This document shows positions 1,794-37,801 of a DNA stretch of 64,000 nt, in pieces (position 1 is the stretch's first letter; every line of letters starts with the position of its first letter). The DNA lies in the IMG/VR virus record IMGVR_UViG_3300046692_000091, positions 248,001 through 312,000 of that record; one strand, given 5' to 3'. The notes beneath the pieces were generated by a model. The model saw only the letters and a list, made by a program, of their open reading frames with translations, was not told the DNA's origin and did no database searches. Both the position numbers and the translations under genes were made by a program.

Positions 1794-1794
1794 A

Positions 1795-2175: not shown

Positions 2176-2185
2176 GAATTTTCCA

Positions 2186-2602: not shown

Positions 2603-2643
2603 CGAGCCTCCCCTAGTGGGAGGCTTTATGCCGGAGTTACCCG

Positions 2644-3143: not shown

Positions 3144-3198
3144 AACAATACTGACGACCACAACACTCTGTGAATGTTTGTTGATGTGAAACTCTTGA

Positions 3199-3225
3199 AG
3201 TGCTACTTCGGTGGCACTATTTTTT
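3199..3225 (+). terminator. intrinsic terminator
   Basis: agtgctac-TTCG-gtggcact followed by a T run. Confidence 0.75.
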
Positions 3226-3258
3226 CCTGAGTATCCGTTGACGCCTACAGAGGTGTAT

Positions 3259-6206: not shown

Positions 6207-6253
6207 TTCATGGCCTCACCTTCGGGTGGGGCTTATGTCCACAAGGAAACAAC

Positions 6254-6658: not shown

Positions 6659-7059
6659 ACTATAACGTCATCTTTAAAGAAGGCGAGCCATGCAAGTGGC
6701 GTTGCATGGTAGATAACGAATGCCGTGATAATGCAGAGGAGATCATATCTGCAAAGTGGTATGATGTTATCGTGGCAGCCACGCATGGTACCGCTATGAC
6801 GCTCATGCTTACTAATGAACATGGCAAAGAACAACTTGTCCCACATTACGCTTATGGCACCTGGGCGGACTGTTCTCAAATCGGTATCCTTAATCCAGAA
6901 CTGGCTACTGAACGTATGCGCGCCTATGTTCAGAAACAAATTAACGAACAAAAAGCCCACCATCAAACTCGGATGAATAACCTGCGTCATGAGATGCGGA
7001 CTATCAACATTAAAGGATTCGTAGATGAGCCAGCTGTACTTGTGGAAACTAACGCGTAA
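6655..7059 (+). CDS. hypothetical protein
   Basis: 134-aa ORF, AAGGTG RBS, ATGA overlap. Confidence 0.7.
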   Translation: MNYNVIFKEGEPCKWRCMVDNECRDNAEEIISAKWYDVIVAATHGTAMTLMLTNEHGKEQLVPHYAYGTWADCSQIGILNPELATERMRAYVQKQINEQKAHHQTRMNNLRHEMRTINIKGFVDEPAVLVETNA

Positions 7060-7369
7060 AGGCGATGTAGATTACGATCAATTTCGTGGGATGGTTGTAT
7101 GTGCATCATCAGAAGACCTAGCACTGCATCATATCGCTCGTGAAGGACGTTGGTCTACTGATACCGATAGATCCCTGGCTGATAAAGTTTCAGACATCTT
7201 AGAAGTAGGTCTCCCTACCTCGGTTGAAGAATACCTGGCTTACGAAATGAGTGGGTTCGATGAAACGGATGAAATGTTTCCCCGTGCACACTGGACAGTA
7301 CAATGCATTGGTATAGTGATGACCGGTATAACACCAGGAATAATTCTCTCCGACATGCGCCACGGATAA
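7025..7369 (+). CDS. widespread phage hypothetical protein
   Basis: YD.F..MVVCA.SE..A...W...CIG.....GIIL pattern typical of small phage proteins. Confidence 0.65.
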   Translation: MSQLYLWKLTRKGDVDYDQFRGMVVCASSEDLALHHIAREGRWSTDTDRSLADKVSDILEVGLPTSVEEYLAYEMSGFDETDEMFPRAHWTVQCIGIVMTGITPGIILSDMRHG

Positions 7370-7413
7370 CTAAAGAAATACCCATAACCCCCATTTAATG
7401 TAAGAGGTTTGTT

Positions 7414-8595
7414 ATGCACGATCCAATCGACGATGTAACGGAAGATGAAGAACTACTTATCTTTCACGCATATCTCGACGAACAAAACAAACTACAATCA
7501 TCATTCGCAATAAATCATACACTCAAGGAAAATGGACTCATGCAATCCCTCAATGTAGAAACTGGTTCCCAAGCTGCAGAACTCGCTGGTATCTCGGCTA
7601 ACCAAATGCTGGAAACCAATGATGGCGATGGTTGGTTTGAAGGTCAAGACATGCTGGATATTCTGGCTCAACCTACCCCAGAACTCCAAGCCGCTAAAGT
7701 ACAAGAGATCCGTACTTCACGTCAAGCTGATGCAGAACTCAACGTAATGGATGGCGCACAGGCTGCAGAGTTCGCATCCATCTCAGCCAATCGGCCGATC
7801 ATTTCTTCCGGTGCTGTGCACGCATCAGTCCCGAAAGACTTCGTCTACGATACTGAAGGTACATTCCTTAAGCCTGTGGAAATTATCGGCATGACTGATG
7901 AGAAGAATTTCAGTGGTGCGTCACTGGCTGAAGCTTTCCTGCAAGCTAAAGAAAGCCTGGGTGGCGATGACGTAGTTAAAGAATCCCTGGAAGATGTAGT
8001 TGCTGCTACTGCAACTAACTCCACCATCAAGCCTCTGACTAAGAAACAGCTGAAGGCACAGAAGCACATGCAAAAGAACATGCAGGGTTACATGAAGAAA
8101 GCGCAAAAACAAGCGCAGACTCAGCATATCCTGAACAAGCTGTACACCCACTCGATCCGTACCCCTGAACAAGCTCGCCAGATCCATGCAGCTCAGTTGG
8201 CTAAAGCTGAAATCGTCTCGATCCTCGGTCAGCGTCAAGCAGATGCATTCTTCGCTGCTAAGCCTGGTACCAAGTGCCATGACTTCTTCCCGAAGGCTAC
8301 TGTTGCAGCTAACCCAACTCTGATGACTTCGGTACAAGGTGAATCCCGTACTCTGGAACAAGTCTACGAATACTTCATCTACAAGCACTTCATGCTGCTG
8401 AGCAAGAAAGCAGAAACCCCATTTGAAGGTGATCTGAATACTTCCGTAGATTGGGAGAACACTGAAGTTAAACCATACGTGGTTTACGAAGGTGCTGAAA
8501 CTACTCAAATCGATCCAGACGCAAAAGGTGATGACGTTGAAGAAGCACAGCCCGAAACCACAGAAAGTTCGTACGAAGAAGACCAAGCCGCTTGA
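7414..8595 (+). CDS. hypothetical low-complexity protein with an internal repeat
   Basis: 393-aa ORF, AGAGG RBS; alternative start at 7540; strong codon bias. Confidence 0.75.
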   Translation: MHDPIDDVTEDEELLIFHAYLDEQNKLQSSFAINHTLKENGLMQSLNVETGSQAAELAGISANQMLETNDGDGWFEGQDMLDILAQPTPELQAAKVQEIRTSRQADAELNVMDGAQAAEFASISANRPIISSGAVHASVPKDFVYDTEGTFLKPVEIIGMTDEKNFSGASLAEAFLQAKESLGGDDVVKESLEDVVAATATNSTIKPLTKKQLKAQKHMQKNMQGYMKKAQKQAQTQHILNKLYTHSIRTPEQARQIHAAQLAKAEIVSILGQRQADAFFAAKPGTKCHDFFPKATVAANPTLMTSVQGESRTLEQVYEYFIYKHFMLLSKKAETPFEGDLNTSVDWENTEVKPYVVYEGAETTQIDPDAKGDDVEEAQPETTESSYEEDQAA

Positions 8596-8632
8596 TACTT
8601 ACAGCCATCGCATTGGCCCAGGTAGTGGTTCA

Positions 8633-8785
8633 ATGATCGCCTCGAAGGTATGGGGTAGCATTAAACGTGCACAAGTCGGTCACAAAGAACGTACGTTCTC
8701 TGAGTCGATGGATCGCGCTAGTACATTGCCAACTTCTGGGATCTTCCATCCGGAATATGAAGCGCATGATTGCTTGACGGTTTAA
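8633..8785 (+). CDS. possible 50-aa protein
   Basis: ATG 8633 in the 97-aa track ORF; fills the gap before the convergent hairpin; weak RBS. Confidence 0.3.
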   Translation: MIASKVWGSIKRAQVGHKERTFSESMDRASTLPTSGIFHPEYEAHDCLTV

Positions 8786-8816
8786 CAGCATAAAGCCTTC
8801 CCCTAGGGGAAGGCGC

Positions 8817-9896
8817 TTATGTCAAGTCACGGATTAGGTCTTCTACATCTTTAACCAAACGTTGCATCATTGGCGATGAACCATTCATCTTAAGTGATTG
8901 CGAATGGATAGACTCACGGAGTTCATAAAGGATCTCGTTGGTCTGTGTCTTATCGTAACTGGGTGCTTGCTTTAAGCTATCTACTAGGTACTTGATGAAT
9001 GGAACTCGCGCTAATGCTAAGGCCCACTCGTTTTGCAGTGTCACAGGTCCCTTAGGGAGTTGTAGGACTTGATACAGAGAATCCTTAAGCAGCATAGGGG
9101 TCATCTGTGCAAGCTCTACCACCATGCCTGTACGCATTGTCCGTTGACTTAATGTATTCTTAGCCATGCCGTCTGTTACAGGGGTAAGGTCAGGAATATA
9201 GAAAGGATGCGGTAGTGGGTACTTGGTATTTGGCAACTTGTACGCCATGCGGGATAATCGGTTGAAATACGCAATCTCCAAATAGGATTCCAAGCAATTA
9301 ACCAAAGCGTAGGAGCCAATGAATTTGTACATGTTAATCGCTTCGGGTTCAACTGTGCCGAAGTTGCTAAACACCCAGTGTCGATATTGAACCATCAGCA
9401 TTGGAATGTTAATAAGCAGTACGCCATAGCCTTTACCCGGAGTACGGTTATTCATGATGGGTAAGTTGATATCACTACGAGAGTGATAAAGATAGCGTAA
9501 AGGTTTTAGATCCCTCCAACTAGCTTTCAAGTTAGTCGTAGGGAATCGTTCGATGGATGAGATCACCACTTCTTCACATTGTGGACCGAGTGTTGCTCCA
9601 GCCTCGAATATCTTTCCTCTATTAATAGCATCACATAGTCCAAGAGTTCGAGTCAGGCCTCTGGCTTGATCCTCTACCTTCTTGGCCCATGTGGCGTCAT
9701 CACTCCGAAACTCCAATACGAAATGATTAATAATCATTGCGAGAAGATTTTTGCTGTCCACTATCTTAGGGAAACGCCGATAGTAGTTTGTTACGTCCTG
9801 GATCTGCTGCTTTACTTGCCGCTGGATATAAGGACGTTTGGGATCATACGTGACCCCCTTGCTACCAATTGGGTCTTCTCTGAAGAGTGCGTACAT
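8817..9896 (-). CDS. conserved virion-associated protein, phiKZ gp52-like
   Basis: 359 aa from ATG 9896 (MYALF); minus-strand gene two genes before chimallin, matching family synteny. Confidence 0.65.
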   Translation of the reverse strand: MYALFREDPIGSKGVTYDPKRPYIQRQVKQQIQDVTNYYRRFPKIVDSKNLLAMIINHFVLEFRSDDATWAKKVEDQARGLTRTLGLCDAINRGKIFEAGATLGPQCEEVVISSIERFPTTNLKASWRDLKPLRYLYHSRSDINLPIMNNRTPGKGYGVLLINIPMLMVQYRHWVFSNFGTVEPEAINMYKFIGSYALVNCLESYLEIAYFNRLSRMAYKLPNTKYPLPHPFYIPDLTPVTDGMAKNTLSQRTMRTGMVVELAQMTPMLLKDSLYQVLQLPKGPVTLQNEWALALARVPFIKYLVDSLKQAPSYDKTQTNEILYELRESIHSQSLKMNGSSPMMQRLVKDVEDLIRDLT

Positions 9897-9912
9897 GTGA
9901 ATGTTCCATTGC

Positions 9913-9936
9913 AAAAAAAGTCAGATATATATCATT
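9913..9936 (+). promoter_or_regulatory. probable early (virion RNAP) promoter variant
   Basis: AAAAAAAGTCAGATATATATCATT resembles the AAAAAATCTCAGATCTATATTAC copies. Confidence 0.55.
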
Positions 9937-9967
9937 AAACTGCTAATCCCAGCTGTAAGGATTCTTG

Positions 9968-11164
9968 ATGTTTACAAATGCTTATAAAGCAGCATGTGCT
10001 AATGGCTTCGTCGGTGACGTTGACCAGTTCATTACCGCTCTTCGTCAATCCCCGAAAAAGGAACAAACCATGGACTACGGTCAAACCAAACTCTCTTCTG
10101 TCTCCGCTCAGGAACATGCTGTGAATAAAGTAACCCCTGGTAACGATTCCTTCATCCGCCTGTTGGCTAGCTTGTTTGGCCCAGAAATCTTCTCGAGTCT
10201 GCAGCCAGTTGAACTCGATGTTCCTCGTCCAACCATGCAAGGTGTTGAAGACATGGGTATGTACCAGTTGCATCCTGAGTTGTTCATGTCGGAAAAGAAC
10301 TATGAAATCCCGGAAAAGGTTGTTGCTTCTGGCCAACCAGAAACCATCCAGAACTACATCACCCTCAAGATGATTCCTGCCTTCCTGCAGAAACTGGCAG
10401 AAGCAATCGAGACACACAAAGGTAAGGGCTTCGATCTGCTGCGTGAACAACGTAAACTGATCAATCGCCTGAACAAGCTGATGAGCTACCAAGCTCGTCC
10501 AATGAGCATTATCCCAACTGCAATCCATGACGAATACGAACTGGCGATCTACAAGAACTATGTCGCTCAACAGATCTGTTCGACTAACTTGACCTTGGAC
10601 AAAGGCCTGGATCTGGTTAATGCCGCTGCAAACGGTCTGGCTGACCGTCAGGAAGCTTGCCGTATCAATGAAGAGAAGCAAGCAGCAGCCAAGTTCGATA
10701 AAGCCAAGCGCACGGCTACCGAAGAGGTACTGCGTGATCTGGTAAGTAATATTGGTTCTGTGCCAGCTGATGAACTGGCATTGCGTCTGCGTGGCATTGC
10801 TGAAGAGTTTGCTCCAGCCAAGCCAGTGGATGCCTTCAAACAAGGTTTCAAGGAAGTAATGGATGCAGCTGCCCCAAATCGTTCTGATGTAAAAATCAGC
10901 CTCGATCCAAGTGATAGTCGTCCACTGGATAAGATCGTGCCTTCGTTCCAACGTCAGCTCATGGGTAGTCTCCGTACCATGACACCAGAAGACATTGCTC
11001 GATTGGTAAATAGTTCTATTGTTCCTGAAGATATCCGTGGATGGAACCCAGGCAATCGCGGGCAAACTAACCTGGGTGGTTTTCTCTGCCGCCCAAGCTT
11101 GCATCCAATGGATGGCCCAATGGGTCAAGGCATGATGTCCCATCACTTCGCTAATCGGGATTAA
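9968..11164 (+). CDS. conserved chimallin-adjacent protein, phiKZ gp53-like
   Basis: ~398 aa, TAAGGA RBS, helical/coiled-coil composition, immediately upstream of chimallin. Confidence 0.7.
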   Translation: MFTNAYKAACANGFVGDVDQFITALRQSPKKEQTMDYGQTKLSSVSAQEHAVNKVTPGNDSFIRLLASLFGPEIFSSLQPVELDVPRPTMQGVEDMGMYQLHPELFMSEKNYEIPEKVVASGQPETIQNYITLKMIPAFLQKLAEAIETHKGKGFDLLREQRKLINRLNKLMSYQARPMSIIPTAIHDEYELAIYKNYVAQQICSTNLTLDKGLDLVNAAANGLADRQEACRINEEKQAAAKFDKAKRTATEEVLRDLVSNIGSVPADELALRLRGIAEEFAPAKPVDAFKQGFKEVMDAAAPNRSDVKISLDPSDSRPLDKIVPSFQRQLMGSLRTMTPEDIARLVNSSIVPEDIRGWNPGNRGQTNLGGFLCRPSLHPMDGPMGQGMMSHHFANRD

Positions 11165-11338: not shown

Positions 11339-11368
11339 GAAAAAATCTCAGATCTATATTACTACTTT
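11339..11368 (+). promoter_or_regulatory. early promoter of chimallin (TATATTAC class)
   Basis: GAAAAAATCTCAGATCTATATTACTACTTT contains the phiKZ early consensus TATATTAC; exact 30-bp copy at 21564-21593. Confidence 0.85.
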
Positions 11369-21563: not shown

Positions 21564-21593
21564 GAAAAAATCTCAGATCTATATTACTACTTT
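21564..21593 (+). promoter_or_regulatory. early promoter (TATATTAC class) for the gp68-PicA-Nlp2 operon
   Basis: Exact 30-bp copy of 11339-11368. Confidence 0.85.
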
Positions 21594-29082: not shown

Positions 29083-31056
29083 ATGAATCATTACAAAGCC
29101 CGTGACTTGCTGAATCTGTCTTATGAACAGCTATGGGCACTGCCCTCGGAATGGCACGTCATTGAGTTTGATGATGGAAAGCAGTTACTAGCTCGGGATC
29201 GGATCACTAAGCTGTCCGTTCTGAACTGGTATCCGCTGAAAGCGTATCCAGATGTACCGATCTTGAAAGAGTATCACATGGGTTCGAAGCGAGTGACTGC
29301 AAAGTCACTCATCACCCACCTGAACAAAGTCATCTGGGGTATTCACGATCATACCAACGAAGAAGCTGATCCAGAGCACCTGGCTCGGTTAGCAATCGAA
29401 GCAACTAACTGGTTGTATAACGAATGTACGGTGAATCTATCCCCGTATGTAGCAACGCTGTCGATGTTCGATATCGCTGAAGTATATAACCACCCAGCAA
29501 TCCGGGAAGCAAACGAGAACGTAGAAGAATCCACCTATGGCATTGAATCCGTCGCGTACAAAAAGATCGGTGCAGCGTTCGATGACATTGCGAACTTTCG
29601 TGGTAACTCCATCATTGAAGGTTATCGGTCTGGCACTCAGAAGCTGGAACAACTGCTGCAAGCATTTGGTCCACGGGGTTATCCGACTGACATCAACTCG
29701 GACATCTTCGCACATCCGGTAACAGTTGGCTATGTAGATGGTATCTGGGATCTCTATGGTTCCATGATCGAATCTCGTTCAGGTACCAAAGCGTTGCTCT
29801 ATAACAAAGAGCTGCTGCGGGTAACTGAATATTTCAACCGGAAGTCTCAGCTGATCGCTCAGTATGTACAGCGTCTCCACAAAGGTGATTGCGGTACTCC
29901 AATCCTCATCGACTTCCCGGTCCTGAAGAACACACTCAAAGCTCTGCGCGGTAAGTATTATCTGCGTGAAGATGGCGTGATGGATTGGATGCGCGGTGAT
30001 GAAACGCACATGATCGGTAAGATGATCAAGATGCGTTCGGTACTGGGTTGTACTCACCCAGACCCGGCCGGTGTATGTTCTCGTTGTTATGGTCGGTTGG
30101 CATTCTCGATCATGCGTGGGACTAACATCGGTCAGGTATCTGCCGTATCGATGGGCGATAAGATTACCTCATCGGTATTGTCCACTAAACACACCGACGC
30201 AACCTCTGCGGTAGAGCAGTTCCAAATCACTGGTGCCGTAGCACGATATCTCCGTGATGGCGATCAAAGTGAAACGTTGTATTTGAAGAAAGACTTGGCT
30301 AACCAAGGATATAGACTAATCATCAAGACAGCTGAAGCAACATCTCTAGCCGACGTACTGATGATCAAAGACCTATCGGCATATCCAGCTGAAAGTGCAT
30401 CTGAACTGACACACATCGGTTTGATTCGCACTGTCGAAGGAGAAGATCTGGGTGACATTCTCCCAGTGTCGTTGTATAACCGTAAGGCAAGTCTCTCCAC
30501 TGAAATGCTATGTCACGTACAACGAGTAGGCTGGATCACAGACAACCGCGATAACATCGTGATTGATCTGACAGGGTTCGACTTCGAACAACCATTCCTG
30601 ACGTTGCCTTATAAGCACGTGAACATGTACGAGTTCATGAAGCGCGTACAATCGTTCCTGCACTCCGGTGACAATGGCGATGGTTCTAAGTTGTCCTCAG
30701 ACAAGGTTGGCTTCACTAGCAAAACCTATCTGAAGAACTATAAAGATCCAGTCGATGCTATTGCTGCATTCGCTGCATTGATCAATGAGAAGATTCGTCT
30801 GAACATCGTTCATTGTGAAGTTCTGGTATACGCTATGATGATCGTATCGGCGTCTGCTAAGGATTACAACTTGCCAATCCCAGGTATCACGGGTTCATTC
30901 GAGAAGTATAACAAAGTAATGGACAACCGTAGTCTTGCTGGCAAGCTGGCTTTCGAGAAGCAGCATGAGCCACTTAATAACCCAGGCAGCTTCCTGTATA
31001 AAAACAGGATCAACCACCCTTACGATACAGCTGTAATGGGGGGTTGCATGTCCTAA
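29083..31056 (+). CDS. non-virion RNA polymerase beta'-like subunit, C-terminal part (phiKZ gp74-like)
   Basis: ESRSG.KALLYN...L...EYF.RK.QL, DCG, RSVLGC...GVC.RCYG, TSSVLSTKH. Confidence 0.92.
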   Translation: MNHYKARDLLNLSYEQLWALPSEWHVIEFDDGKQLLARDRITKLSVLNWYPLKAYPDVPILKEYHMGSKRVTAKSLITHLNKVIWGIHDHTNEEADPEHLARLAIEATNWLYNECTVNLSPYVATLSMFDIAEVYNHPAIREANENVEESTYGIESVAYKKIGAAFDDIANFRGNSIIEGYRSGTQKLEQLLQAFGPRGYPTDINSDIFAHPVTVGYVDGIWDLYGSMIESRSGTKALLYNKELLRVTEYFNRKSQLIAQYVQRLHKGDCGTPILIDFPVLKNTLKALRGKYYLREDGVMDWMRGDETHMIGKMIKMRSVLGCTHPDPAGVCSRCYGRLAFSIMRGTNIGQVSAVSMGDKITSSVLSTKHTDATSAVEQFQITGAVARYLRDGDQSETLYLKKDLANQGYRLIIKTAEATSLADVLMIKDLSAYPAESASELTHIGLIRTVEGEDLGDILPVSLYNRKASLSTEMLCHVQRVGWITDNRDNIVIDLTGFDFEQPFLTLPYKHVNMYEFMKRVQSFLHSGDNGDGSKLSSDKVGFTSKTYLKNYKDPVDAIAAFAALINEKIRLNIVHCEVLVYAMMIVSASAKDYNLPIPGITGSFEKYNKVMDNRSLAGKLAFEKQHEPLNNPGSFLYKNRINHPYDTAVMGGCMS

Positions 31057-31071
31057 GCGGAGGACGAAGTT

Positions 31072-31109
31072 TGGAGGGCTTCGGCCCTCCATTACTCGTT
31101 AATTTTTTT
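31072..31109 (+). terminator. intrinsic terminator
   Basis: tggagggc-TTCG-gccctcca followed by a T-rich tract. Confidence 0.65.
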
Positions 31110-32636
31110 ATGGAACCACTGATTACAGCCGAGAGGTATACCCATGGGGTACGCCTATCTGGTTATTCCAGGGAGACACTGTATAAACTACAGCGCTTCT
31201 TGGATACGTTACTGTTACGGGAACCAACTAAAGTCCAAGGCCGTATGGTCATGGTTACTAAGAAGAAGTACTATGGCATAACGGAAGACAACCGAAGCAT
31301 CTTTATCCATCGAAACTCTTACCCCGCTCTGGTTAAGCATCTAGCAAATGTACAAATCCCAGAAGAACGGATCAGGGTAATTGATATCGTGGTGCCTACT
31401 GCTGCACCGGCTAGGTTCGTGGTAAAAGAAAAGTTCTCAATGCGGGACTACCAGGAAACAATCCTGGAAGATATCTTGAGACCACATCTCCATTCGGCTC
31501 GGGTAGACCTGCAAACGGGTAAAGGGAAAACGTACACAAGTCTGGAAGCTCAATCGTCTCTGGGGTGTCGTACCGTTATCATGGTTCCGCCTAAGTACTT
31601 CGGTATCTGGGAAGAAGCATTGAAAGACGTCTACGAAGATATTGACTTGCGTTACGTTCGTGTGAGTGGATCTGCAGAATTGCAAATGATGATCAACCGT
31701 GGCATCGAGAATGACCTTGATGGTATCGATGTTATATTGATCTCTAACGTTACCTATCGTGCGTATATTGATACGTTCGAGCGCCTGGGTGACAAGATCG
31801 ACACTGTTGGCTATAATGCTCCTCCGCCTCGTTTCCACGAAGCGTTGAAAGTAGGCTTGCAGATCAACGACGAAATCCAAGAAGACCCAGGTCTGTTGTT
31901 CCGTACGGACATGTACACCAACGTTGCAAAACAGATCTATCTGTCGGCTACTCCTTTCACGGGGAATGACTACGTTACAAAGATGATCGACTTGATGCTC
32001 CCTCCAGAGACATGCTGTCGGTTACCTAGTTACGATTCGTATATCAACGTGGTTGGTGTGCTGTACAGCGAGCCTGCAATTCAGTCTCGTGATTATCTGA
32101 CTCCGTTTAAGAACACGTATAACCATGCGCGTTACGAAACGCAGATGATGAAATCGAAGAAACGTCTGGAAGCTTACAACCTGATGGTTTCTCGAATTCT
32201 CTATGGTCAGTATATCTCGGATCGTATTCAGGAACAGAAAGCCCTAGTACTATGTGCTACGGTTGCTTTCATTGATCAACTTGTTAAGTACTTGAAGGTT
32301 AAGTATCCCGATATACAGATCAATGAACACGTAGCTGGTTCTCCTTACGCACGATTGATGTTGAACGATGTAACGGTATCGACTATTAAGTCATCCGGTA
32401 CTGGTGTTGACATTCCTAACTTGCGTGAAGTGATCCTGTTACAAGCAACGGACTCGAAGAAGGATAACATCCAGATCCTAGGCCGCCTGCGTAAGTTGAA
32501 GCTGTTTGCTGACGTGGTCCCACGTATGACATACCTGGTGTGTCAACACATCCCACAACACGTCAAGTACCACAAGAACAAGGCTGACCACTTCGCTGGT
32601 AAGATCTTGAACATGGTTCTCAGAAAAATTAGCTAG
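31110..32636 (+). CDS. SF2 (UvsW-like) helicase, phiKZ gp75-like
   Basis: MRDYQ, LQTGKGKT (Walker A), INDEIQE, LSAT, TGVDIPNL, QILGRLR; start set to ATG 31110. Confidence 0.9.
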   Translation: MEPLITAERYTHGVRLSGYSRETLYKLQRFLDTLLLREPTKVQGRMVMVTKKKYYGITEDNRSIFIHRNSYPALVKHLANVQIPEERIRVIDIVVPTAAPARFVVKEKFSMRDYQETILEDILRPHLHSARVDLQTGKGKTYTSLEAQSSLGCRTVIMVPPKYFGIWEEALKDVYEDIDLRYVRVSGSAELQMMINRGIENDLDGIDVILISNVTYRAYIDTFERLGDKIDTVGYNAPPPRFHEALKVGLQINDEIQEDPGLLFRTDMYTNVAKQIYLSATPFTGNDYVTKMIDLMLPPETCCRLPSYDSYINVVGVLYSEPAIQSRDYLTPFKNTYNHARYETQMMKSKKRLEAYNLMVSRILYGQYISDRIQEQKALVLCATVAFIDQLVKYLKVKYPDIQINEHVAGSPYARLMLNDVTVSTIKSSGTGVDIPNLREVILLQATDSKKDNIQILGRLRKLKLFADVVPRMTYLVCQHIPQHVKYHKNKADHFAGKILNMVLRKIS

Positions 32637-32656
32637 TCCTTCGGGGCTAGCTTTAT
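32631..32656 (+). terminator. hairpin after the helicase
   Basis: agctagtcc-TTCG-gggctagct-TTA. Confidence 0.6.
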
Positions 32657-32673
32657 TCCGTCTAGAGGTTTAA

Positions 32674-32877
32674 ATGCAATACGCTTACTTCGCTTTTCTA
32701 ATAGCTATCGTCATAACGCTAGGTGCCGTCTGGTACCGTGATTGGAAGTATCCATTCATGCAGCGTACCCCACACTGGACAAAGTCCCTGTCGCACAAGA
32801 TCGCTAAGATTGCATTCTGTGTAGCCTTGGTGTTTATGGCTACCTTCCTTTATATGTACTTCAAGGAAATGATTTAA
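32674..32877 (+). CDS. small membrane protein (2 TM)
   Basis: 67 aa, two hydrophobic segments, GAGGT RBS. Confidence 0.75.
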   Translation: MQYAYFAFLIAIVITLGAVWYRDWKYPFMQRTPHWTKSLSHKIAKIAFCVALVFMATFLYMYFKEMI

Positions 32878-32916
32878 ATAATCTAAAGGACTATATTACA
32901 ATCGTGAATATAGTCC
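32878..32916 (+). promoter_or_regulatory. probable early promoter embedded in a 10-bp inverted repeat
   Basis: TATATTAC at 32892-99 preceded by AATAATCT; GGACTATATT-N9-AATATAGTCC. Confidence 0.6.
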
Positions 32917-32934
32917 AACATAAGGAGCTCCATC

Positions 32935-33138
32935 ATGTATTGGGCACTCGTCTTCTTTGGTCCTGTTATACTCATGCTAGTTGGCTTGGGTGCAGCAGGT
33001 TCAGCTATTGCAATGATCGCTGATAAACCACGTCGTACAATGACCTGGATTATTAGTCCGGTGATGGTTGCACTGGGTGTTGGCATCTTCTTCAGTGGTA
33101 TCACACTGTTTGATTTCGTACTCACAAGTATCAAATAA
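32935..33138 (+). CDS. small membrane protein (2 TM)
   Basis: 67 aa, TAAGGAG RBS. Confidence 0.75.
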   Translation: MYWALVFFGPVILMLVGLGAAGSAIAMIADKPRRTMTWIISPVMVALGVGIFFSGITLFDFVLTSIK

Positions 33139-33147
33139 GGAACAATA

Positions 33148-33387
33148 ATGCTTTTCGCAATTATGACATTATACGCTGCCTACCGTGGTATCTGGTGGAT
33201 AGTTGACTGGCAACAAGGTAAGTTCACTGCTACTACATTTTCATGGGCGGTCAATTGCGTCATGGCATGTGTTGCAACAATTTGTGTTGTTGCAATTATC
33301 TTCTCGACCAGTATCAACATGACCGCAGGTGAATCTGGTTTTGGTATTAACATCGTCTTCGCATATGAATTAAAAGCTAAGGAGTAA
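33148..33387 (+). CDS. small membrane protein (2-3 TM)
   Basis: 79 aa, TAAGGA RBS. Confidence 0.75.
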   Translation: MLFAIMTLYAAYRGIWWIVDWQQGKFTATTFSWAVNCVMACVATICVVAIIFSTSINMTAGESGFGINIVFAYELKAKE

Positions 33388-33389
33388 TC

Positions 33390-33626
33390 ATGATTACCGT
33401 TCTAGGCATGCTAATGGTTGTACTCGCTTTCTGTTTGCTGTTAGCATACCTACAAGGCTATCTGTGGCACGGACTGCCAACAGCTATACTCTGCGTTACC
33501 TTTATGGTTATCAGCTGTGGTGTGCTGGTATACGGTCTTGAAAGTGAGACTCCAGGTGGCCTCTATTATAAATCCGATCACCCACAGCTAAAGGAGGTAA
33601 AAAATGGAATACTTGTCCGTAGTTGA
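33390..33626 (+). CDS. small membrane protein (2 TM)
   Basis: 78 aa, TAAGGAG RBS. Confidence 0.75.
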   Translation: MITVLGMLMVVLAFCLLLAYLQGYLWHGLPTAILCVTFMVISCGVLVYGLESETPGGLYYKSDHPQLKEVKNGILVRS

Positions 33627-33843
33627 TTACTTTCATGGTGCTGGTGGGATGCTGTTGATCGGTATCCTAGTAATGGTTGTCGCTTTCGTAATGCATGTTA
33701 GTGAGAACAACATGAACCATGCAGTTTATGAGTTCGTTGCTCTCATTTACATAGGTGGGACCTTAGGGTTAACCTTGTTCTTCATCGCAATTCCTACACT
33801 CTGTTTTATCCGTCCAATCTTGATGTGTTATCGGGTGATGTAA
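33604..33843 (+). CDS. small membrane protein (2 TM)
   Basis: 79 aa, AAGGAGG RBS. Confidence 0.75.
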   Translation: MEYLSVVDYFHGAGGMLLIGILVMVVAFVMHVSENNMNHAVYEFVALIYIGGTLGLTLFFIAIPTLCFIRPILMCYRVM

Positions 33844-34067
33844 TGCTTTTGAATATGGCTACATTTGTATTGATGCTGATGTTTTGTCTAACTCTGCCTG
33901 GTGGGGTCTGGTTAGTCTATCGTCGTGAGTATGAACCTGAATTCATAACACGGCATCGTAAACTACTATTGTGGATTCTCTCCACAGTGACTATCCTTAC
34001 GGTGGTATCAACAGGGATCTGTATGTATGAGATCTCTTTGATTCAGGAACGCTTACTTTTACCATAA
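33843..34067 (+). CDS. small membrane protein (2 TM)
   Basis: 74 aa from a TAATG-coupled ATG at 33843. Confidence 0.7.
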   Translation: MLLNMATFVLMLMFCLTLPGGVWLVYRREYEPEFITRHRKLLLWILSTVTILTVVSTGICMYEISLIQERLLLP

Positions 34068-34070
34068 CGG

Positions 34071-34117
34071 CATAAAGCCTCCACCTTCGGGTGGAGGCAA
34101 TATGTTATTTTTTTTTT
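34071..34117. terminator. bidirectional terminator
   Basis: CATAAA-gcctccacc-TTCG-ggtggaggc-AATATG plus a long T run; between convergent genes. Confidence 0.8.
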
Positions 34118-34583
34118 ACTTCGTCTGACGATTCATGTCCCGAATATCTCGATTCATATCACGTAGAGCCCTGCTCTGCTCATCTACCTTACGCATCATG
34201 TCTGTTTCACCGATCTCTAGAATGAATGTGGCTTCGTCATATGGGAGTTCTTTAAACTCGTTATAACTAATACCCCACTGTTCTTTGACATTGTAACGAA
34301 CATACTTGCGCATTAATGAACGTACCGATCCACCTTCTACTGTATCCTCTTTGTCGAACATACGAACAACATCTAGAGGGTGCTTAGGGTGATCAGGTGG
34401 ACGAATACCATAGTCGTCCAAATAAGCTTCGCGCAGAAGTATCTCTGCAGTCGATGGTCTTATGGCTCCTACCTCAGCATAAAGCTTATCCAACTTACCC
34501 CCACGGGGGCGACGCTGATGGCCGAAGCTATACTGCGTCACGTGCCCATTGGGATCAGACAGATCAACTGCCAGGCGTGTCAT
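34116..34583 (-). CDS. conserved protein, possible tail/baseplate assembly chaperone
   Basis: 155 aa, WGISYNEFKELPYDEATFILE C-terminal pattern; cotranscribed with the 547-aa gene. Confidence 0.6.
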   Translation of the reverse strand: MTRLAVDLSDPNGHVTQYSFGHQRRPRGGKLDKLYAEVGAIRPSTAEILLREAYLDDYGIRPPDHPKHPLDVVRMFDKEDTVEGGSVRSLMRKYVRYNVKEQWGISYNEFKELPYDEATFILEIGETDMMRKVDEQSRALRDMNRDIRDMNRQTK

Positions 34584-34606
34584 CTGTGGGTCTTTGTTCT
34601 TATGAC

Positions 34607-36250
34607 CTACTGGTTGACTTTCTGGCCCGCCAAGGTAAAAAATGTCGATACGATATCAAGAGGAATCAAGTGATCGAAACGTTCATGGAACTTCTCGGCC
34701 ATTGCTGATTCACACACGGAACAGTTCCACGAAGGAATAGCAACCATGCACAGGATAGTATCGTCGATGAATTGCAGTACAGCTGCTTCGAAAGCAGAAG
34801 CGTACTTCTTATCCGACATTACGTTGGACAGGTATTCATCAATGACTTCTTCGTTCTCGGTCAAGAGCTCTTCAGTAGAATGAGCATCTTCACGTTGATA
34901 GATAGCGTCTACCCAATGAGAGTACTGTCGTGCGCCCGTGATAGAGCCCAGGCGATCGATGTAAGCATTACGGTTAGCGTCACCAGGGGCTTCGTTAAAA
35001 GCGCTGTGTGAAGCATCTACTACGCCGTCAATCCATCGGTTGCCAGCATCCCGTCGCTCAGCAATCGAAGGTACACGGAGACGAATGCCAATATCATCAA
35101 ACCATTTGATAGGCTTTCGACCCAGAGTGGTGTCTTGTGCATATTGATCCAATTCCTCTGCGCGTAATTGACGACCGAATCGAACGTGTAGTAAATCTTT
35201 CTGACGTTCTACGAGTTGTGTGATATCGAACCAGGTAAGCGAGAACATGTCCAGCTTAGCTTCTTCAACATGGGTACACTTGGATGGATCAGCGATGCAG
35301 GTATGGCGGTAGTTAAAACCACCTGGATACATAGTCGATGCCAAACCGTGGTGCAGAATCGGTTCGTCCAATGCAGACAGACGGTGTTCGATGTCACCAG
35401 GAGAAGTAGCAGCCATGTTAGTGTGTGTTACACACTGCAGAGCCAGATCCGTGAGAGCGTTGTTATAAACAGCAATCCGGTTAGAGAAACCTTGCCCTTT
35501 GGTAGCACGACCCAAACGAACTGCAACGTTCTGCAGTCGTTGAATCATGTTGGCTACTTCTGTGTTAGTCGGAGTACGCAACCGAATCCAGATACCAGTG
35601 TGAGGCATAGGGAATTCATGAGTGGCACCCATACCCGATTTACGGGTAAGATATGCGAGCATATCCGATTTAGCAGGTTTGTCTGACAGTTTGATCTTCG
35701 GACGGGATGGACCGATCTTACGACCGTTGTGTTCAAAGAACTGTACCCATTCAGAACCTTCGCGATGCGTAGCACGACGCGGTGTGGTGTTCATGTCGAC
35801 GTGTTCGATAGCGGACTGGAGTGTCTCCAGCCAATCGAGGTCGCGTTGCTCTGTGGTGATCTCACCGCCTTCAATGTCCGAGAACAAGCGGTTGTGTACA
35901 CGCAATACTTCTTCAAACGTTTCAGGGTTTTCACGCATGAACGAAATGATAGAAGCCATTGCTGGAATCTTTTCCGAATCAACTGGACGGTCGATACGGA
36001 AGTTTACTTTTGGTTGCTTGGGTGTGAACGGTACCAAGACCTCTTCATCACCCGGATCAACTGGATCGTCATCACCATCTGGCGATGTAACCGGAGCAGG
36101 GACTACCGGATCGGTAGCCTCTACTTCAATAACCTTTTGCTCTGGTGCTATTTCATAAACTGGAGCAGCAACAGTTTGCGCGAAGTGAACGGCTAGTTCA
36201 GCAGGGATCTCTTCGGCGAATTCTTCATCATCTTGAATATGTTGGGACAT
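34607..36250 (-). CDS. conserved Chimalliviridae protein (phiKZ gp77-like), possible baseplate hub chaperone
   Basis: 547 aa, acidic N-terminus, FPMPHTGIWIRLRTP, YP.GF.Y...C, C-terminal CSVC. Confidence 0.65.
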   Translation of the reverse strand: MSQHIQDDEEFAEEIPAELAVHFAQTVAAPVYEIAPEQKVIEVEATDPVVPAPVTSPDGDDDPVDPGDEEVLVPFTPKQPKVNFRIDRPVDSEKIPAMASIISFMRENPETFEEVLRVHNRLFSDIEGGEITTEQRDLDWLETLQSAIEHVDMNTTPRRATHREGSEWVQFFEHNGRKIGPSRPKIKLSDKPAKSDMLAYLTRKSGMGATHEFPMPHTGIWIRLRTPTNTEVANMIQRLQNVAVRLGRATKGQGFSNRIAVYNNALTDLALQCVTHTNMAATSPGDIEHRLSALDEPILHHGLASTMYPGGFNYRHTCIADPSKCTHVEEAKLDMFSLTWFDITQLVERQKDLLHVRFGRQLRAEELDQYAQDTTLGRKPIKWFDDIGIRLRVPSIAERRDAGNRWIDGVVDASHSAFNEAPGDANRNAYIDRLGSITGARQYSHWVDAIYQREDAHSTEELLTENEEVIDEYLSNVMSDKKYASAFEAAVLQFIDDTILCMVAIPSWNCSVCESAMAEKFHERFDHLIPLDIVSTFFTLAGQKVNQ

Positions 36251-36255
36251 TGGTA

Positions 36256-36813
36256 TTACTCCGATGCCACCTGACCAGCTGCGAATGTTTTGTACAGGAT
36301 GTCTGCGCCTACACCGCCTGCTTCCAGGATGGACATTTGCTTCATCAGCTCAGGGCCGACTTGGGTTTCCATTTGAGTTTGAATCTTGCTATACCCCATG
36401 GTCAGTTCAGCAACCAGGGTCTGTTCATCTTCAGTTACCGCGCCTTCTTTACCTTCGTGTCGTTTCGACAGAGCAAGCAGTACAGAGGACATGGTGGCCA
36501 GGTCTTCTTTCAGAGCGTCGAAGCCCTTTGCGAATTCCTCGTAGTATTCACCCAGTTTGGTACGAACCAGTTCTTCTTCAGCAATAACTGGCAGAACAAA
36601 CAGCTGTGTGGTTTGCAGTGCTTCACTGTTCAGCAGGAACAATTGTTTCAGGATCGACCAGCCTTCAGTAGCGAGCAAAGTCTGTGCTATAAAGGATTGG
36701 GTTTCCAGAGCTTGTTCTTTAGTCATAGCGTCACCGATTTCCACGTTGAGGGTAGTACCTTCACGAGTAACGGATTGAGCAGGAACGATCACTTCGGACA
36801 TTGGGAGATTCAT
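36256..36813 (-). CDS. conserved helical hypothetical protein
   Basis: 185 aa, AAGGA RBS. Confidence 0.7.
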   Translation of the reverse strand: MNLPMSEVIVPAQSVTREGTTLNVEIGDAMTKEQALETQSFIAQTLLATEGWSILKQLFLLNSEALQTTQLFVLPVIAEEELVRTKLGEYYEEFAKGFDALKEDLATMSSVLLALSKRHEGKEGAVTEDEQTLVAELTMGYSKIQTQMETQVGPELMKQMSILEAGGVGADILYKTFAAGQVASE

Positions 36814-36843
36814 GTTGTTTCCTTAGGCAAATTTGCGGATTGT

Positions 36844-36913
36844 TAACATAGTATCACCCACTCAGTATTTTACTTCCAAGGTAAAGATCAACTCATAACG
36901 CAACACTATGTTA
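36844..36913. promoter_or_regulatory. divergent late-type promoters (TATG)
   Basis: ACTATGTTA on both strands (36844-52 minus, 36905-13 plus) between divergent genes; TATG is the phiKZ late consensus. Confidence 0.5.
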
Positions 36914-36940
36914 CTAAAATCAAAGGAAGAGGGCTTTTTA

Positions 36941-37801
36941 ATGCAATTCATTATAGACAGTGTACTTACACCACTGATCACAGAAGAGCGTAAGGAGACA
37001 ATCCTTAGCTGTGTAGCATCACTGGAGTCACTGGACTACCAGGCAGCACTGGATGAGCTCCACCAAGTTGTAGAGATGTCAGATGGCACTGTAGATAATG
37101 CGACTATGATCGCACGTATTGACGATGTGATCTGGAATGCTCATGAAACTATTTTCAAACAACATGAAGTACAGGTATCGATGGAGGCTTCACAAGAAGT
37201 CCGACAATCTATCGTGGAAGTGTTGTCCAGTTTCAACAAGTATGTAATCCCCGATCAACTATTAATGTTGTTCGAAGGTGGGTTCATGCCAGAAGAGATA
37301 CTAGCCCATATGTGTCAACTCTTTACTTCGGTGAAGGTAGATGAAGTGTGGCCAGAGATCAAAGATGTTTCTCCTAACCTCATGCGCACAATGCGGGATG
37401 AGATTGAACGACAAGTTCGTTATCGTGGGTTAGAAGACACTGAGACTTCCCCAGTACTGCGTGTCAAGATGGTTAACGACTACATTCGTGTATGTGGTGC
37501 AGAAACATTCTCTATGCTCTTAGACCTGTCTAATGCTGGTGTCCGTATCGGTACCCGTGAGATCGGTCCTCTTATTCAACAATCACTGGAAGCTCTGGAT
37601 CGTAAAGAGCCAGAACACGCAGCCCTGGAAATCTTTGGATTAGTATTGATGTCTAATACTCCAGTCGCAGAGATCGAAAAGAAGGTACGTGATTTGATCG
37701 GTGATTACACAGATAACAACATGGACAATTCCCGAATGCTTGAATCTGTCAAGCCTTTGGTGAAGCTCCTTAGCGAGTACAAAGAAGATGCAAATTCGTG
37801 A
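36941..37801 (+). CDS. conserved virion protein (phiKZ gp79-like)
   Basis: Start set to ATG 36941; directly upstream of the vRNAP subunit as in phiKZ. Confidence 0.65.
   Translation: MQFIIDSVLTPLITEERKETILSCVASLESLDYQAALDELHQVVEMSDGTVDNATMIARIDDVIWNAHETIFKQHEVQVSMEASQEVRQSIVEVLSSFNKYVIPDQLLMLFEGGFMPEEILAHMCQLFTSVKVDEVWPEIKDVSPNLMRTMRDEIERQVRYRGLEDTETSPVLRVKMVNDYIRVCGAETFSMLLDLSNAGVRIGTREIGPLIQQSLEALDRKEPEHAALEIFGLVLMSNTPVAEIEKKVRDLIGDYTDNNMDNSRMLESVKPLVKLLSEYKEDANS

What the first reader, a model, noticed from the sequence alone, without database searches (positions are those of the whole stretch)
32674..34067. Array of six two-TM microproteins, five of them behind a probable early promoter
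Six consecutive 67-79 aa, very hydrophobic ORFs, mostly with strong RBSs, sit between core genes and are bounded by hairpins. They share a size and helical-hairpin layout but not sequence. A TATATTAC early-type motif lies before the last five, pointing to expression in the first minutes, not at lysis time. Candidate roles are remodelling of the early infection vesicle or inner membrane, superinfection exclusion, or blocking membrane-bound defence effectors. They could be a hetero-oligomeric membrane system or a fast-turnover anti-defence cassette.
Basis: partly seen in the sequence, partly recalled or inferred. Interest (0 to 1): 0.65.

Follow-up and report, generated by a model that had tools for sequence, protein, structure and literature searches.

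The report
Phage early two-helix membrane-protein cassette
A giant nucleus-forming Pseudomonas phage carries six real but unrelated genes for tiny two-helix membrane proteins, five of them behind a conserved early promoter; the matching genes of model phage phiKZ are switched on in the first minutes and are dispensable in the laboratory, so this is an accessory early membrane cassette of unknown job, not a lysis system.

Summary
Window 32674-34067 carries six consecutive + strand ORFs of 67-79 aa. Each has two hydrophobic segments (the first in m3 is weaker). Most have good ribosome-binding sites, and terminator hairpins bound the array. The window lies in a 314.8 kb phiKZ-like (Chimalliviridae) Pseudomonas phage close to Psa21 and D6.

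The slot sits between the gp75-type helicase and a convergent gene. It holds 2-7 small two-TM ORFs in every phiKZ/201phi2-1/phiPA3/Psa21-type relative examined, including phiKZ gp76-76.3. Noxifer, RAY, Goslar and OBP carry soluble proteins there instead.

All six genes show purifying selection (pN well below pS) yet diverge far faster than their neighbours. They come and go between close relatives and share no detectable homology with each other or with any library family.

The TATATTAC site at 32892 belongs to a family of about 27 sites in this genome, all on the + strand. The same element lies inside the array in 16 relatives. Published phiKZ data show early kinetics and transposon tolerance for gp76-76.3.

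The best reading is a clade-specific, dispensable, fast-evolving cassette of early inner-membrane proteins. Its role is probably protective (exclusion or counter-defence), but this is untested. Holin and obligate-complex readings are not supported.

The parts
31110..32636 (+). Context: SF2/RAD2-type DNA helicase, homolog of phiKZ gp75 and 201phi2-1 gp131. It marks the upstream edge of the slot.
   Evidence: phrog_16 DNA helicase, E 1.5e-35. 92% aa identity to Psa21 and 67% to phiKZ PHIKZ075. Annotation in relatives.
32631..32660 (+). Terminator-like hairpin after the helicase: 9-bp stem, UUCG loop, UUUAUU tail. It overlaps the helicase stop codon.
   Evidence: -14.6 kcal/mol centroid, z -2.35. 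A GC-rich hairpin followed by TTTAT lies at the same place in nearly all 16 loci examined, with different stem sequences.
32674..32877 (+). m1: 67-aa two-TM protein with a basic loop (5 K/R). It is the only array member upstream of the early promoter. It belongs to family F1, which has a conserved WYRD-x-KYP motif after TM1.
   Evidence: Hydropathy. 11 family members in the Psa21 clade and RVTF4. pN 0.27-0.41 against pS 0.65-0.90. Charge distribution.
32860..32913 (+). Early (virion-RNA-polymerase type) promoter element. The core TATATTAC is at 32892-32899, with an upstream ATTTAAA block and a downstream GTGAAT. It lies inside an inverted repeat at 32888-32916.
   Evidence: 36.5 bits on a leave-one-out PWM. 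About 27 sites score 29-56 bits, all on the + strand. 43 nt to the m2 ATG, as at the other sites. Conserved in 16 relatives. Literature consensus. Inverted repeat -12.9 kcal/mol.
32935..33138 (+). m2: 67-aa, very hydrophobic two-TM protein (GRAVY 1.35) with a short basic loop (DKPRR). It is the first gene after the promoter.
   Evidence: Only one diverged ortholog (L017, 49% aa; pN 0.34, pS 0.73) plus a near-identical strain copy. Relatives carry a different 58-aa two-TM family (F3) in this position.
33148..33387 (+). m3: 79-aa protein with one strong and one weaker hydrophobic segment and a 24-aa C-terminal tail.
   Evidence: Orthologs only in L017 (59% aa) and one compost-metagenome protein. 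pN 0.24, pS 0.73.
33390..33626 (+). m4: 78-aa two-TM protein with a 28-aa charged C-terminal tail. Its 3' end carries the Shine-Dalgarno sequence of m5 and overlaps m5 by 23 nt.
   Evidence: Family F4 is present in L005, L008, L009 and D6 but absent from the closest relative L017, which indicates gene gain or loss. pN 0.44-0.55 against pS 0.69-0.76.
33604..33843 (+). m5: 79-aa two-TM protein and the most conserved member (family F0). It has an N-terminal LS-x3-YF-x-G-x-GG motif, a G-x2-LGL motif in TM2, and a C-terminal tail with two invariant Cys (C67, C75).
   Evidence: Alignment A1, 18 invariant columns. Only 5 true members among 1.84 billion representatives. All members found lie in this same slot. 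AF2 pLDDT 82.7 with helices 6-11, 13-34, 40-69 and 73-78.
33843..34067 (+). m6: 74-aa two-TM protein (80 aa if read from the GTG at 33825). It has a basic loop and a conserved amphipathic C-terminal helix (YEI-x-QIQ-x-RL). Its start overlaps the m5 stop as TAATG.
   Evidence: Alignment A2. Family F2 occurs in 10 loci, always downstream of the m5 family. pN 0.14-0.48 against pS 0.42-0.90.
34077..34098 (.). Bidirectional intrinsic-terminator hairpin (9 bp, 7 GC, UUCG loop) between the array and the convergent gene. On the + strand a T10 run follows.
   Evidence: -24.2 kcal/mol (z -7.1) on the + strand and -23.0 (z -6.55) on the - strand.
34116..34583 (-). Context: convergent 155-aa gene of unknown function (phrog_12109). 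It marks the downstream edge of the slot and is followed by the phiKZ gp77 and gp78 homologs.
   Evidence: Homologs bound the slot in 19 of 20 loci. Annotation in relatives.

Best explanation
**What it is.** This is a lineage-specific accessory cassette of small integral inner-membrane proteins. Each is a two-helix hairpin, and they belong to six unrelated families. The cassette sits in a fixed slot between the essential nvRNAP/helicase block and the essential gp77-type block of phiKZ-like Pseudomonas phages.

**How it is expressed.**
- Five genes (m2-m6) form one tightly packed, partly translationally coupled operon. It runs from a conserved early promoter of the type read by the injected virion RNA polymerase to a bidirectional terminator.
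- These five are therefore made in the first minutes of infection.
- m1 lies between the helicase terminator and that promoter. It can only be made by read-through from the helicase transcript.

**What it probably does (inferred, not shown).**
- The proteins insert into the host inner membrane, from which the early infection vesicle is derived.
- Each acts largely on its own, through its short conserved loop or tail, on host or competitor membrane machinery.
- The likely role is conditionally useful and protective: excluding secondary infections and/or blunting membrane-acting host defences.
- This would explain why the set is dispensable in the laboratory, evolves several times faster than its neighbours, and is reshuffled between close relatives.
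- It is not a lysis timer and not a core part of the vesicle or nucleus machinery.
For: **Shown here**
- Six ORFs with two-TM hydropathy and ribosome-binding sites.
- Purifying selection in all six, with pN 0.14-0.55 against pS 0.42-0.90.
- The same slot holds 2-7 small two-TM ORFs in all phiKZ/201phi2-1/phiPA3/Psa21-type loci.
- Against the nearest relative the six are 49-75% identical in aa and m4 is absent. The helicase is 92.5% and the convergent gene 90.6% identical in the same comparison.
- DNA of the array does not align to D6 or Psa21 while the flanks do.
- No homology among the six or elsewhere in the genome. No Pfam, PHROG or NCBIfam family.
- Promoter: 36.5-bit member of a family of about 27 sites, all on the + strand, with typical spacing, conserved inside the array in 16 relatives.
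- Terminators at both ends.

**From the literature**
- phiKZ and 201phi2-1 promoter consensus (PMC7058600; PMC11512511).
- phiKZ gp76, 76.1 and 76.3 transcripts peak at the first two time points and fall 3-7 fold. They persist when nucleus formation is blocked, as the authors describe for early classes (PMC12571901).
- phiKZ TnSeq: gp62-74 have 0 insertions. gp76, 76.1, 76.2 and 76.3 have 3, 2, 4 and 2 insertions with 116-5481 reads. gp76.4 and gp77 have 0 (PMC12676376).

**Inferred**
- Membrane insertion and topology. Basic loops in m1, m2 and m6 suggest loop-in. A basic C-tail in m5 suggests N-in/C-in.
- Independent action and a protective role.
Against: - There is no direct evidence of translation, membrane location or any phenotype for these six proteins. 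No RNA run was listed for this phage.
- Early timing is measured only in phiKZ, whose slot proteins are not detectably homologous to these.
- phiKZ gp76.2 also rises late: 1428 at the first time point, 3868 at the last.
- Fast divergence of hydrophobic hairpins can reflect weak constraint rather than an arms race.
- m5 and m6 are adjacent, coupled and co-conserved in the Psa21 clade, which would also fit a small complex.
- Nothing links the set to a particular defence system or receptor.
Confidence: 0.55

Rival explanations
1. The proteins, or a core subset such as m5 and m6, assemble into one hetero-oligomeric membrane complex such as a channel or scaffold. The array would then be a single machine rather than a collection of independent factors.
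For: - m5 and m6 families are adjacent in all 10 loci that have m6. The m5 stop overlaps the m6 start as TAATG, and the m4 3' end carries the m5 ribosome-binding site.
- m5 has small-x3-small glycine motifs and two invariant Cys.
- All five genes sit in one operon.
Against: - Membership varies between close relatives. m4 is absent from the nearest relative, and m2 and m3 are replaced by other families in Psa21 and D6.
- The m5 family occurs without m6 in L010, RVTF4 and L028.
- An extra gene (family F10) is inserted between the m5 and m6 families in D6 and L008.
- phiKZ members individually tolerate insertions.
Confidence: 0.15
2. They are phage-encoded components of the early infection (EPI) vesicle membrane. 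They would be needed to shape it, to move nucleotides or mRNA across it, or to hand the genome to the nucleus.
For: - Early promoter and early kinetics in phiKZ.
- The vesicle derives from the inner membrane and is the site of early transcription, with polysomes at its surface (PMC13282480; bioRxiv 10.1101/2023.09.20.558163).
- No phage membrane protein of the vesicle is named in the reviews searched.
Against: - phiKZ gp76-76.3 tolerate transposon insertions, while the flanking genes do not.
- The vesicle-forming chimalliviruses Goslar and RAY, and also Noxifer and OBP, have no such array in this slot.
- The vesicle forms at injection, before any of these proteins can be made.
- No family is conserved across the clade.
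Confidence: 0.08
3. They are holins, antiholins or pinholins that set lysis time.
For: - Size and two-TM layout resemble class II holins (own knowledge).
- m6 has a weak PHROG holin hit (phrog_6384, E 0.2).
- phiKZ gp76.2 RNA rises late.
Against: - The PHROG hit is not significant, and no holin family in Pfam or NCBIfam matches.
- No endolysin or spanin gene lies next to the array. The neighbours are RNAP, helicase and gp77-type genes.
- The promoter is of the early class, and the phiKZ counterparts peak early.
- The phiKZ counterparts are dispensable for plaque-forming growth.
- m1, m2 and m6 have basic loops, which suggests N-out/C-out rather than the N-in/C-in of class II holins.
Confidence: 0.05
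4. Some or all are not functional genes: chance hydrophobic ORFs in T-rich spacer DNA, or decaying remnants.
For: - The region is T-rich and low in GC (0.432; AT skew -0.112).
- m2 and m3 have almost no relatives.
- No family annotation exists.
Against: - pN is well below pS in every ortholog pair.
- Frames, starts, ribosome-binding sites and overlaps are conserved.
- The array has its own promoter and terminator.
- The syntenic phiKZ ORFs are transcribed.
- The T-richness is what hydrophobic coding produces.
Confidence: 0.03

Closest known systems
phiKZ PHIKZ076, 076.1, 076.2 (076.3), 201phi2-1 gp132-gp133, and the unnamed 'hypothetical proteins' of Psa21 gp078-082 and D6 in the same slot
   Same: - Same slot between the gp75-type helicase and the convergent gp76.4/gp77-type genes.
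- Same size and two-TM layout.
- Same embedded or preceding TATATTAC element and the same bounding terminators.
- m1, m4, m5 and m6 are true orthologs of Psa21-clade genes.
   Different: - No detectable sequence homology to the phiKZ or 201phi2-1 members.
- m2 and m3 are nearly orphan.
- The count and order of genes differ in each phage.
- None of these has an assigned function. Only the phiKZ genes have expression and Tn-seq data.
T4 Imm, the early small inner-membrane superinfection-immunity protein (Pfam Imm_superinfect; recalled from own knowledge)
   Same: It is a small phage protein of about 80 aa with two hydrophobic helices. It is made early, is non-essential, and acts at the inner membrane. 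This is a working analogy for function.
   Different: No sequence match to any Pfam family at a significant level. Imm is a single gene, not an array. No exclusion phenotype has been tested here.
Class II holins and pinholins, for example lambdoid S21 (own knowledge)
   Same: About 70 aa, two TM helices, phage-encoded.
   Different: Holins are late genes next to an endolysin. Here the promoter is early, there is no lysis neighbour, the phiKZ counterparts are dispensable, and no holin HMM matches.
Host-takeover and 'hyperplastic' early gene clusters of large lytic phages, such as the SPO1 host-takeover module and T4 early small-ORF regions (own knowledge)
   Same: Runs of small, fast-evolving, mostly non-essential early genes with strong ribosome-binding sites and early promoters. 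Several encode membrane proteins.
   Different: This block is exclusively two-TM hairpin proteins. It sits in one fixed slot between essential core genes and is driven by a virion multisubunit RNAP promoter. Homology is absent.

Membership tests
phiKZ-type early (virion RNAP) promoter class | AT-rich consensus with TATATTAC core, an upstream TTTaaA block and a downstream GTG | tested here: met
   36.5 bits on a leave-one-out PWM of this genome's sites, with background below 25. It matches the published 201phi2-1 and phiKZ consensus.
phiKZ-type early (virion RNAP) promoter class | Same strand as the early genes, with a short leader to the first gene | tested here: met
   All of the about 27 sites are on the + strand. 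Motif-to-start distance is 43 nt here, against mostly 35-50 nt at the other sites.
phiKZ-type early (virion RNAP) promoter class | A mapped transcription start and early, rifampicin-independent transcription | not testable with these tools
   No RNA run was listed for this phage. Only indirect support exists: phiKZ gp76, 76.1 and 76.3 show early kinetics.
gp76-slot small-TM cassette of phiKZ-like Pseudomonas phages (defined here by synteny) | Lies between the gp75-type helicase and the convergent gp76.4/gp77-type genes | tested here: met
gp76-slot small-TM cassette of phiKZ-like Pseudomonas phages (defined here by synteny) | Consists of proteins of 50-90 aa with two hydrophobic helices | tested here: met
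   The first helix of m3 is marginal.
gp76-slot small-TM cassette of phiKZ-like Pseudomonas phages (defined here by synteny) | Sequence homology to the phiKZ members | tested here: not met
   Iterated HMM searches of each family against all ORFs of 27 loci do not reach the phiKZ or 201phi2-1 members. Membership is therefore positional, not homologous.
Holin (class II / pinholin) | Match to a holin family model | tested here: not met
   The best hit is phrog_6384 at E 0.2 for m6. Nothing was found in Pfam or NCBIfam.
Holin (class II / pinholin) | Late expression and linkage to endolysin or spanin genes | tested here: not met
   Early-class promoter. Neighbours are RNAP, helicase and unknown core genes. 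The phiKZ counterparts are early.
Holin (class II / pinholin) | Membrane permeabilisation on expression | not testable with these tools
   This needs expression in the host.
T4 Imm superinfection-immunity family | Match to the Pfam family model | tested here: not met
   No such family appears among Pfam hits, even at E up to 1.
T4 Imm superinfection-immunity family | Blocks DNA entry of a second phage | not testable with these tools
   This needs a superinfection assay.

The most novel reading that the evidence does not exclude
The cassette could be a dedicated counter-measure module aimed at immune effectors that attack the membrane of the early infection vesicle or the inner membrane, such as pore-forming JukB-type or other TM effectors. 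Each hairpin protein would neutralise a different effector, or plug or mask the vesicle membrane. That would make it the first anti-defence locus made of integral membrane proteins, and the first set of phage-encoded membrane proteins acting at a bacterial-virus organelle.
Probability: 0.1. Interest if true: 0.8.

Novelty: new member of a known kind. Interest (0 to 1): 0.45.

Why it matters
- Nucleus-forming jumbo phages are a main model for viral organelles in bacteria. No phage-encoded integral membrane protein has been assigned a role in their early, membrane-bound stage in the reviews searched.
- This work defines a fixed, promoter-equipped slot that every phiKZ-, 201phi2-1-, phiPA3- and Psa21-type phage fills with its own set of early two-helix membrane proteins.
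- In phiKZ the slot is expressed early and is dispensable, so it is easy to delete or swap.
- That gives a concrete, small target for asking what these phages do to the host membrane in the first minutes: exclusion of competitors, defence evasion or vesicle biology.
- If the role proves to be ordinary superinfection exclusion, the finding is a useful annotation rather than a surprise.

Tried and rejected
- **Family scans.** Pfam, PHROGs and NCBIfam scans of all six gave only sub-threshold compositional hits to unrelated membrane families. PADLOC was not run.
- **Paralogy.** BLASTP among the six, tblastn against the whole phage genome, and hhalign between 14 slot families, with a reversed-sequence null, showed no relationship. 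The one exception is a marginal F6-F13 signal (49%) between adjacent genes in two distant relatives.
- **m5 and phiKZ gp76.** I suspected by eye that the m5 family extends to phiKZ gp76, because of a similar N-terminal motif and a C-x7-C tail. Iterated HMM searches, and a profile search of 1.84 billion representatives, did not connect them, so I dropped the idea.
- **Word-index searches** for m2, m3 and m5 found only orthologs from the same phage clade.
- **ESM Atlas** feature search for m5 scored 0.80, which is chance level.
- **Foldseek** of the m5 model against BFVD returned only its Psa21 ortholog (E 0.058). Everything else had E above 2.
- **Co-fold of m5 with m6** scored 0.01 against a mark of 0.32. 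The verdict was 'no answer', so it is neither support nor evidence against binding. The tool had been busy on six earlier tries.
- **Expression data.** No public RNA run was listed for this stretch.
- **TATATTAC count in the window alone** is weak: 4 sites against 1.22 expected, and 2 of 100 shuffles reach 4. The case rests on the whole-genome matrix and on conservation instead.
- **Promoter hairpin.** The idea that the hairpin around the promoter is a general feature of early promoters was rejected. Only 3 of 27 sites have one.
- **Rfam** gave no match in 30000-37000.
- **Literature.** No paper found discusses these genes' function.
Full report
**What the window is.** The window is bases 248001-312000 of a single 314,814-bp contig. 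Its DNA and proteins match phiKZ-like, nucleus-forming Pseudomonas jumbo phages. The closest are Psa21 (Tepukevirus) and D6. Over window 32000-35000 only the flanks align at DNA level: 80-82% identity over 52-53% of the query.

The genes around the finding are as follows.
- An nvRNAP beta-type subunit at 29083-31056 (phrog_3015, E 1.6e-228).
- An SF2 helicase at 31110-32636 (phrog_16). It is 92% identical to Psa21, 67% to phiKZ PHIKZ075 and 65% to 201phi2-1 gp131.
- On the other strand, three genes of unknown function that correspond to 201phi2-1 gp135-137 and phiKZ gp77-78.

**The observation.** All six ORFs exist as described.
- Sizes are 67, 67, 79, 78, 79 and 74 aa.
- m6 most likely starts at the ATG at 33843, which overlaps the m5 stop as TAATG. 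The in-frame GTG at 33825 would give 80 aa.
- GRAVY is 0.62-1.35, and each protein shows two hydrophobic stretches of about 20 residues. The first stretch of m3 is marginal.
- Five genes have AGGA/GGAG-type ribosome-binding sites. m6 has a weak one but is coupled to m5. m4 overlaps m5 by 23 nt and carries the m5 ribosome-binding site in its last codons.
- An AlphaFold2 model of m5, built with 12 homologs, is a confident helical hairpin: pLDDT 82.7, helices 13-34 and 40-69, plus short terminal helices.
- The array is bounded by two hairpins. One lies at 32631-32652 directly after the helicase stop. A strong one at 34077-34098 folds on both strands.
- In the whole phage genome a simple census finds 20 small non-nested ORFs with at least two hydrophobic segments. 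Five of them (six with m3) are this array, which is the largest run. This is not a chance pattern.

**They are genes.** Every ORF has at least one diverged ortholog in related loci. In every pair non-synonymous differences are far rarer than synonymous ones: pN 0.14-0.55 against pS 0.42-0.90. Synonymous sites are mostly saturated. Starts, overlaps and ribosome-binding sites are conserved.

**They are six unrelated families.**
- BLASTP among the six gives nothing below E 0.017. tblastn against the genome finds no paralog.
- Profile-profile comparison of the slot families gives probabilities under 2%, below a reversed-sequence null.
- Pfam, PHROGs and NCBIfam give only sub-threshold compositional hits.

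**The slot is conserved but its contents are not.** I fetched 18 IMG/VR loci through the helicase, one JGI metagenome locus found through an m5 relative, and annotated records of D6, Psa21, 201phi2-1, phiKZ, RVTF4, Noxifer, RAY, Goslar and OBP.

In every member of the phiKZ / 201phi2-1 / phiPA3-size / Psa21 group, the space between the helicase and the convergent gene is filled with 2-7 ORFs of 50-90 aa with two hydrophobic helices.
- phiKZ has gp76, 76.1 and 76.2, plus the one-TM gp76.3.
- 201phi2-1 has gp132 and gp133.
- Psa21 and D6 have five.
- RVTF4 has seven.

Noxifer (helicase 52% identical), RAY, Goslar and OBP, and two distant metagenomic relatives, carry soluble proteins there instead.

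Family distribution within the Psa21 clade is uneven.
- The families of m1, m5 and m6 are shared.
- m4 is present in some relatives but absent from the window's closest relative.
- m2 and m3 occur only in that closest relative. Elsewhere a different 58-aa family replaces them.
- Other relatives have extra families inserted.

Against the closest relative the helicase is 92.5% and the convergent gene 90.6% identical. The small proteins are 49-75% identical.

m5 is the best-conserved member. It has 18 invariant positions, including a glycine-rich N-terminal motif and two cysteines in the C-terminal tail. Even so, a profile search of 1.84 billion representatives finds only five true members. Those whose genomic context I looked at lie in this same slot. 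m2 and m3 are near-orphans.

**The promoter.** TATATTAC alone is weak evidence within the window: 4 sites against 1.2 expected. Genome-wide the picture is clear.
- There are 32 copies, 30 of them on the + strand. Most sit in a long shared context, with an ATTTAAA-like block about 20 nt upstream and GTG about 5 nt downstream.
- A matrix built from the other sites scores the site at 32892 at 36.5 bits. That falls inside a group of about 27 sites at 29-56 bits, all on the + strand. Everything else in either strand scores below 25.
- The motif-to-ATG distance of 43 nt is typical of the family.
- The same element lies inside or at the head of the array in 16 relatives, spanning at least four genera. 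In phiKZ it precedes gp76. In 201phi2-1 it precedes gp133.
- The consensus equals the published predicted promoters of phiKZ and 201phi2-1 (PMC7058600).
- It fits the AT-rich early motif about 10 bp upstream of mapped starts in 201phi2-1 (PMC11512511).

m1 lies upstream of this element. Only about 20 nt separate it from a hairpin that recurs after the helicase in nearly all of the 16 loci, with different stem sequences and a TTTAT tail. m1 therefore has no room for its own promoter and must depend on read-through from the helicase transcript.

**Experimental data from phiKZ for the same slot.**
- *Time course (Gerovac et al., PMC12571901, source data of Fig. 3b).* Five time points, control ASO (replicate 1):
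  - PHIKZ076: 792, 840, 363, 229, 284.
  - 076.1: 754, 798, 371, 272, 454.
  - 076.3: 4144, 3862, 1277, 575, 606.
  - When the nucleus is blocked by chmA knock-down, the three stay high (for example 076.3: 4488, 5362, 3874, 3329, 2588). This is the behaviour the authors describe for early, vRNAP-driven classes.
  - The major head gene rises from 21026 to 121458.
  - 076.2 starts like the others but also rises late, to 3868.
- *Transposon library (PMC12676376, supplement 2).*
  - PHIKZ062-074 have no insertions.
  - The helicase has 2 insertions with 15 reads.
  - 076, 076.1, 076.2 and 076.3 have 3, 2, 4 and 2 insertions with 1656, 116, 1527 and 5481 reads.
  - 076.4 and 077 have none.
  - In phiKZ the cassette is thus an early-expressed, dispensable island between essential blocks.

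**Interpretation.** The solid part is a clade-specific, fast-turnover operon of early small membrane proteins in a fixed slot.

The functional part is inference.
- Positive-inside counting suggests m1, m2 and m6 have cytoplasmic basic loops with both ends outside. m5 has both ends inside.
- Conservation in m1, m5 and m6 is concentrated in short loop or tail motifs. This is how small membrane proteins that bind larger partners usually look (own knowledge).
- Dispensability, rapid divergence and gene-by-gene replacement fit proteins that face a variable outside world: competitor phages and host defences.
- I therefore favour independent protective factors at the inner membrane, acting in superinfection exclusion and/or against membrane-acting immunity.

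The alternatives fare as follows.
- A core vesicle function is unlikely, given dispensability in phiKZ and the array's absence from other vesicle-forming chimalliviruses.
- A holin role is unlikely, given the promoter class, early kinetics, neighbours and lack of any holin match.
- An obligate complex is unlikely for the whole set because membership varies. An m5-m6 pair remains possible. The single co-fold I could run returned no verdict and is not used either way.

**Novelty.** The orthologs and positional counterparts are deposited as 'hypothetical proteins'. I found no paper that discusses them. Clusters of small, fast-evolving early genes, some membrane-bound, are a known feature of large lytic phages (own knowledge). 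I therefore rate this a new member of a known kind, with moderate interest. Its value is that it defines a small, deletable, promoter-equipped locus for studying what these phages do at the membrane in the first minutes.

**Limits.**
- There is no expression or protein evidence for this phage. None was listed.
- TM prediction is by hydropathy and one AlphaFold model, not a dedicated predictor.
- Timing and dispensability are transferred from phiKZ by synteny and promoter conservation, not by homology of the proteins.

Noticed in passing
window 11355-11362, 21580-21587 and 32892-32899 (+); whole genome G000: The genome holds a sharply defined family of about 27 early-promoter-like sites (29-56 bits), all on the + strand. 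This is close to the 28-32 early promoters reported for phiKZ. Two further members lie in this window. The TATATTAC at 26810 (-) does not fit the extended consensus.
   Followed up: partly
genome G000 5370-10974 and 93046-93307 (outside the window): Several other early-promoter operons open with small one- or two-TM ORFs, for example at 7139-7315 and 93083-93307. Small membrane proteins may be a general feature of this phage's early gene set.
   Followed up: partly
genome G000 150386-150916 (outside the window): A second run of three consecutive small two-TM ORFs (48, 58 and 71 aa) ends just before the early promoter at 150935.
   Followed up: no
window 6634-6990 (-): A 118-aa non-nested ORF with two hydrophobic segments lies on the minus strand. 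It was not examined further.
   Followed up: no
window 32888-32916: The array's promoter core sits in the 5' arm of a 12-13 bp inverted repeat (-12.9 kcal/mol, z about -6.5). Its arms are conserved in Psa21-clade relatives. Only 3 of 27 early promoters in the genome have such a hairpin, so it is specific to a few promoters and remains unexplained.
   Followed up: partly
window 32631-32660 and the same place in L001-L023: The hairpin after the helicase recurs in nearly all of the 16 loci examined. Stem sequences differ, the loop is usually a UUCG-type tetraloop, and a TTTAT(T/G)(T/C)CG tail follows. The same 'CTTTATGCCGT'-like tail is seen just upstream of many early promoters. This suggests a phage-specific terminator signature.
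   Followed up: partly
L018, L019 and L021; PA1C/phiHQ-type records: The helicase homolog matches in two separated pieces in several relatives. In PA1C-type P. aeruginosa phages it is annotated as two CDSs. This may reflect an intron or insertion in the gene.
   Followed up: no
window 33390-33626 versus L017:8285-8311: m4 is present in the window but missing from its closest relative, where only 26 nt separate the m3 and m5 orthologs. m4's relatives occur in more distant members of the clade. This looks like recombinational mosaicism within the array.
   Followed up: partly
phiKZ PHIKZ076.2 (L022:5741-5935): Unlike its neighbours, the 076.2 RNA rises again at the last time point (1428 to 3868), and the rise is lost when the nucleus is blocked. 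This hints at an additional nvRNAP-dependent late signal over that gene.
   Followed up: no
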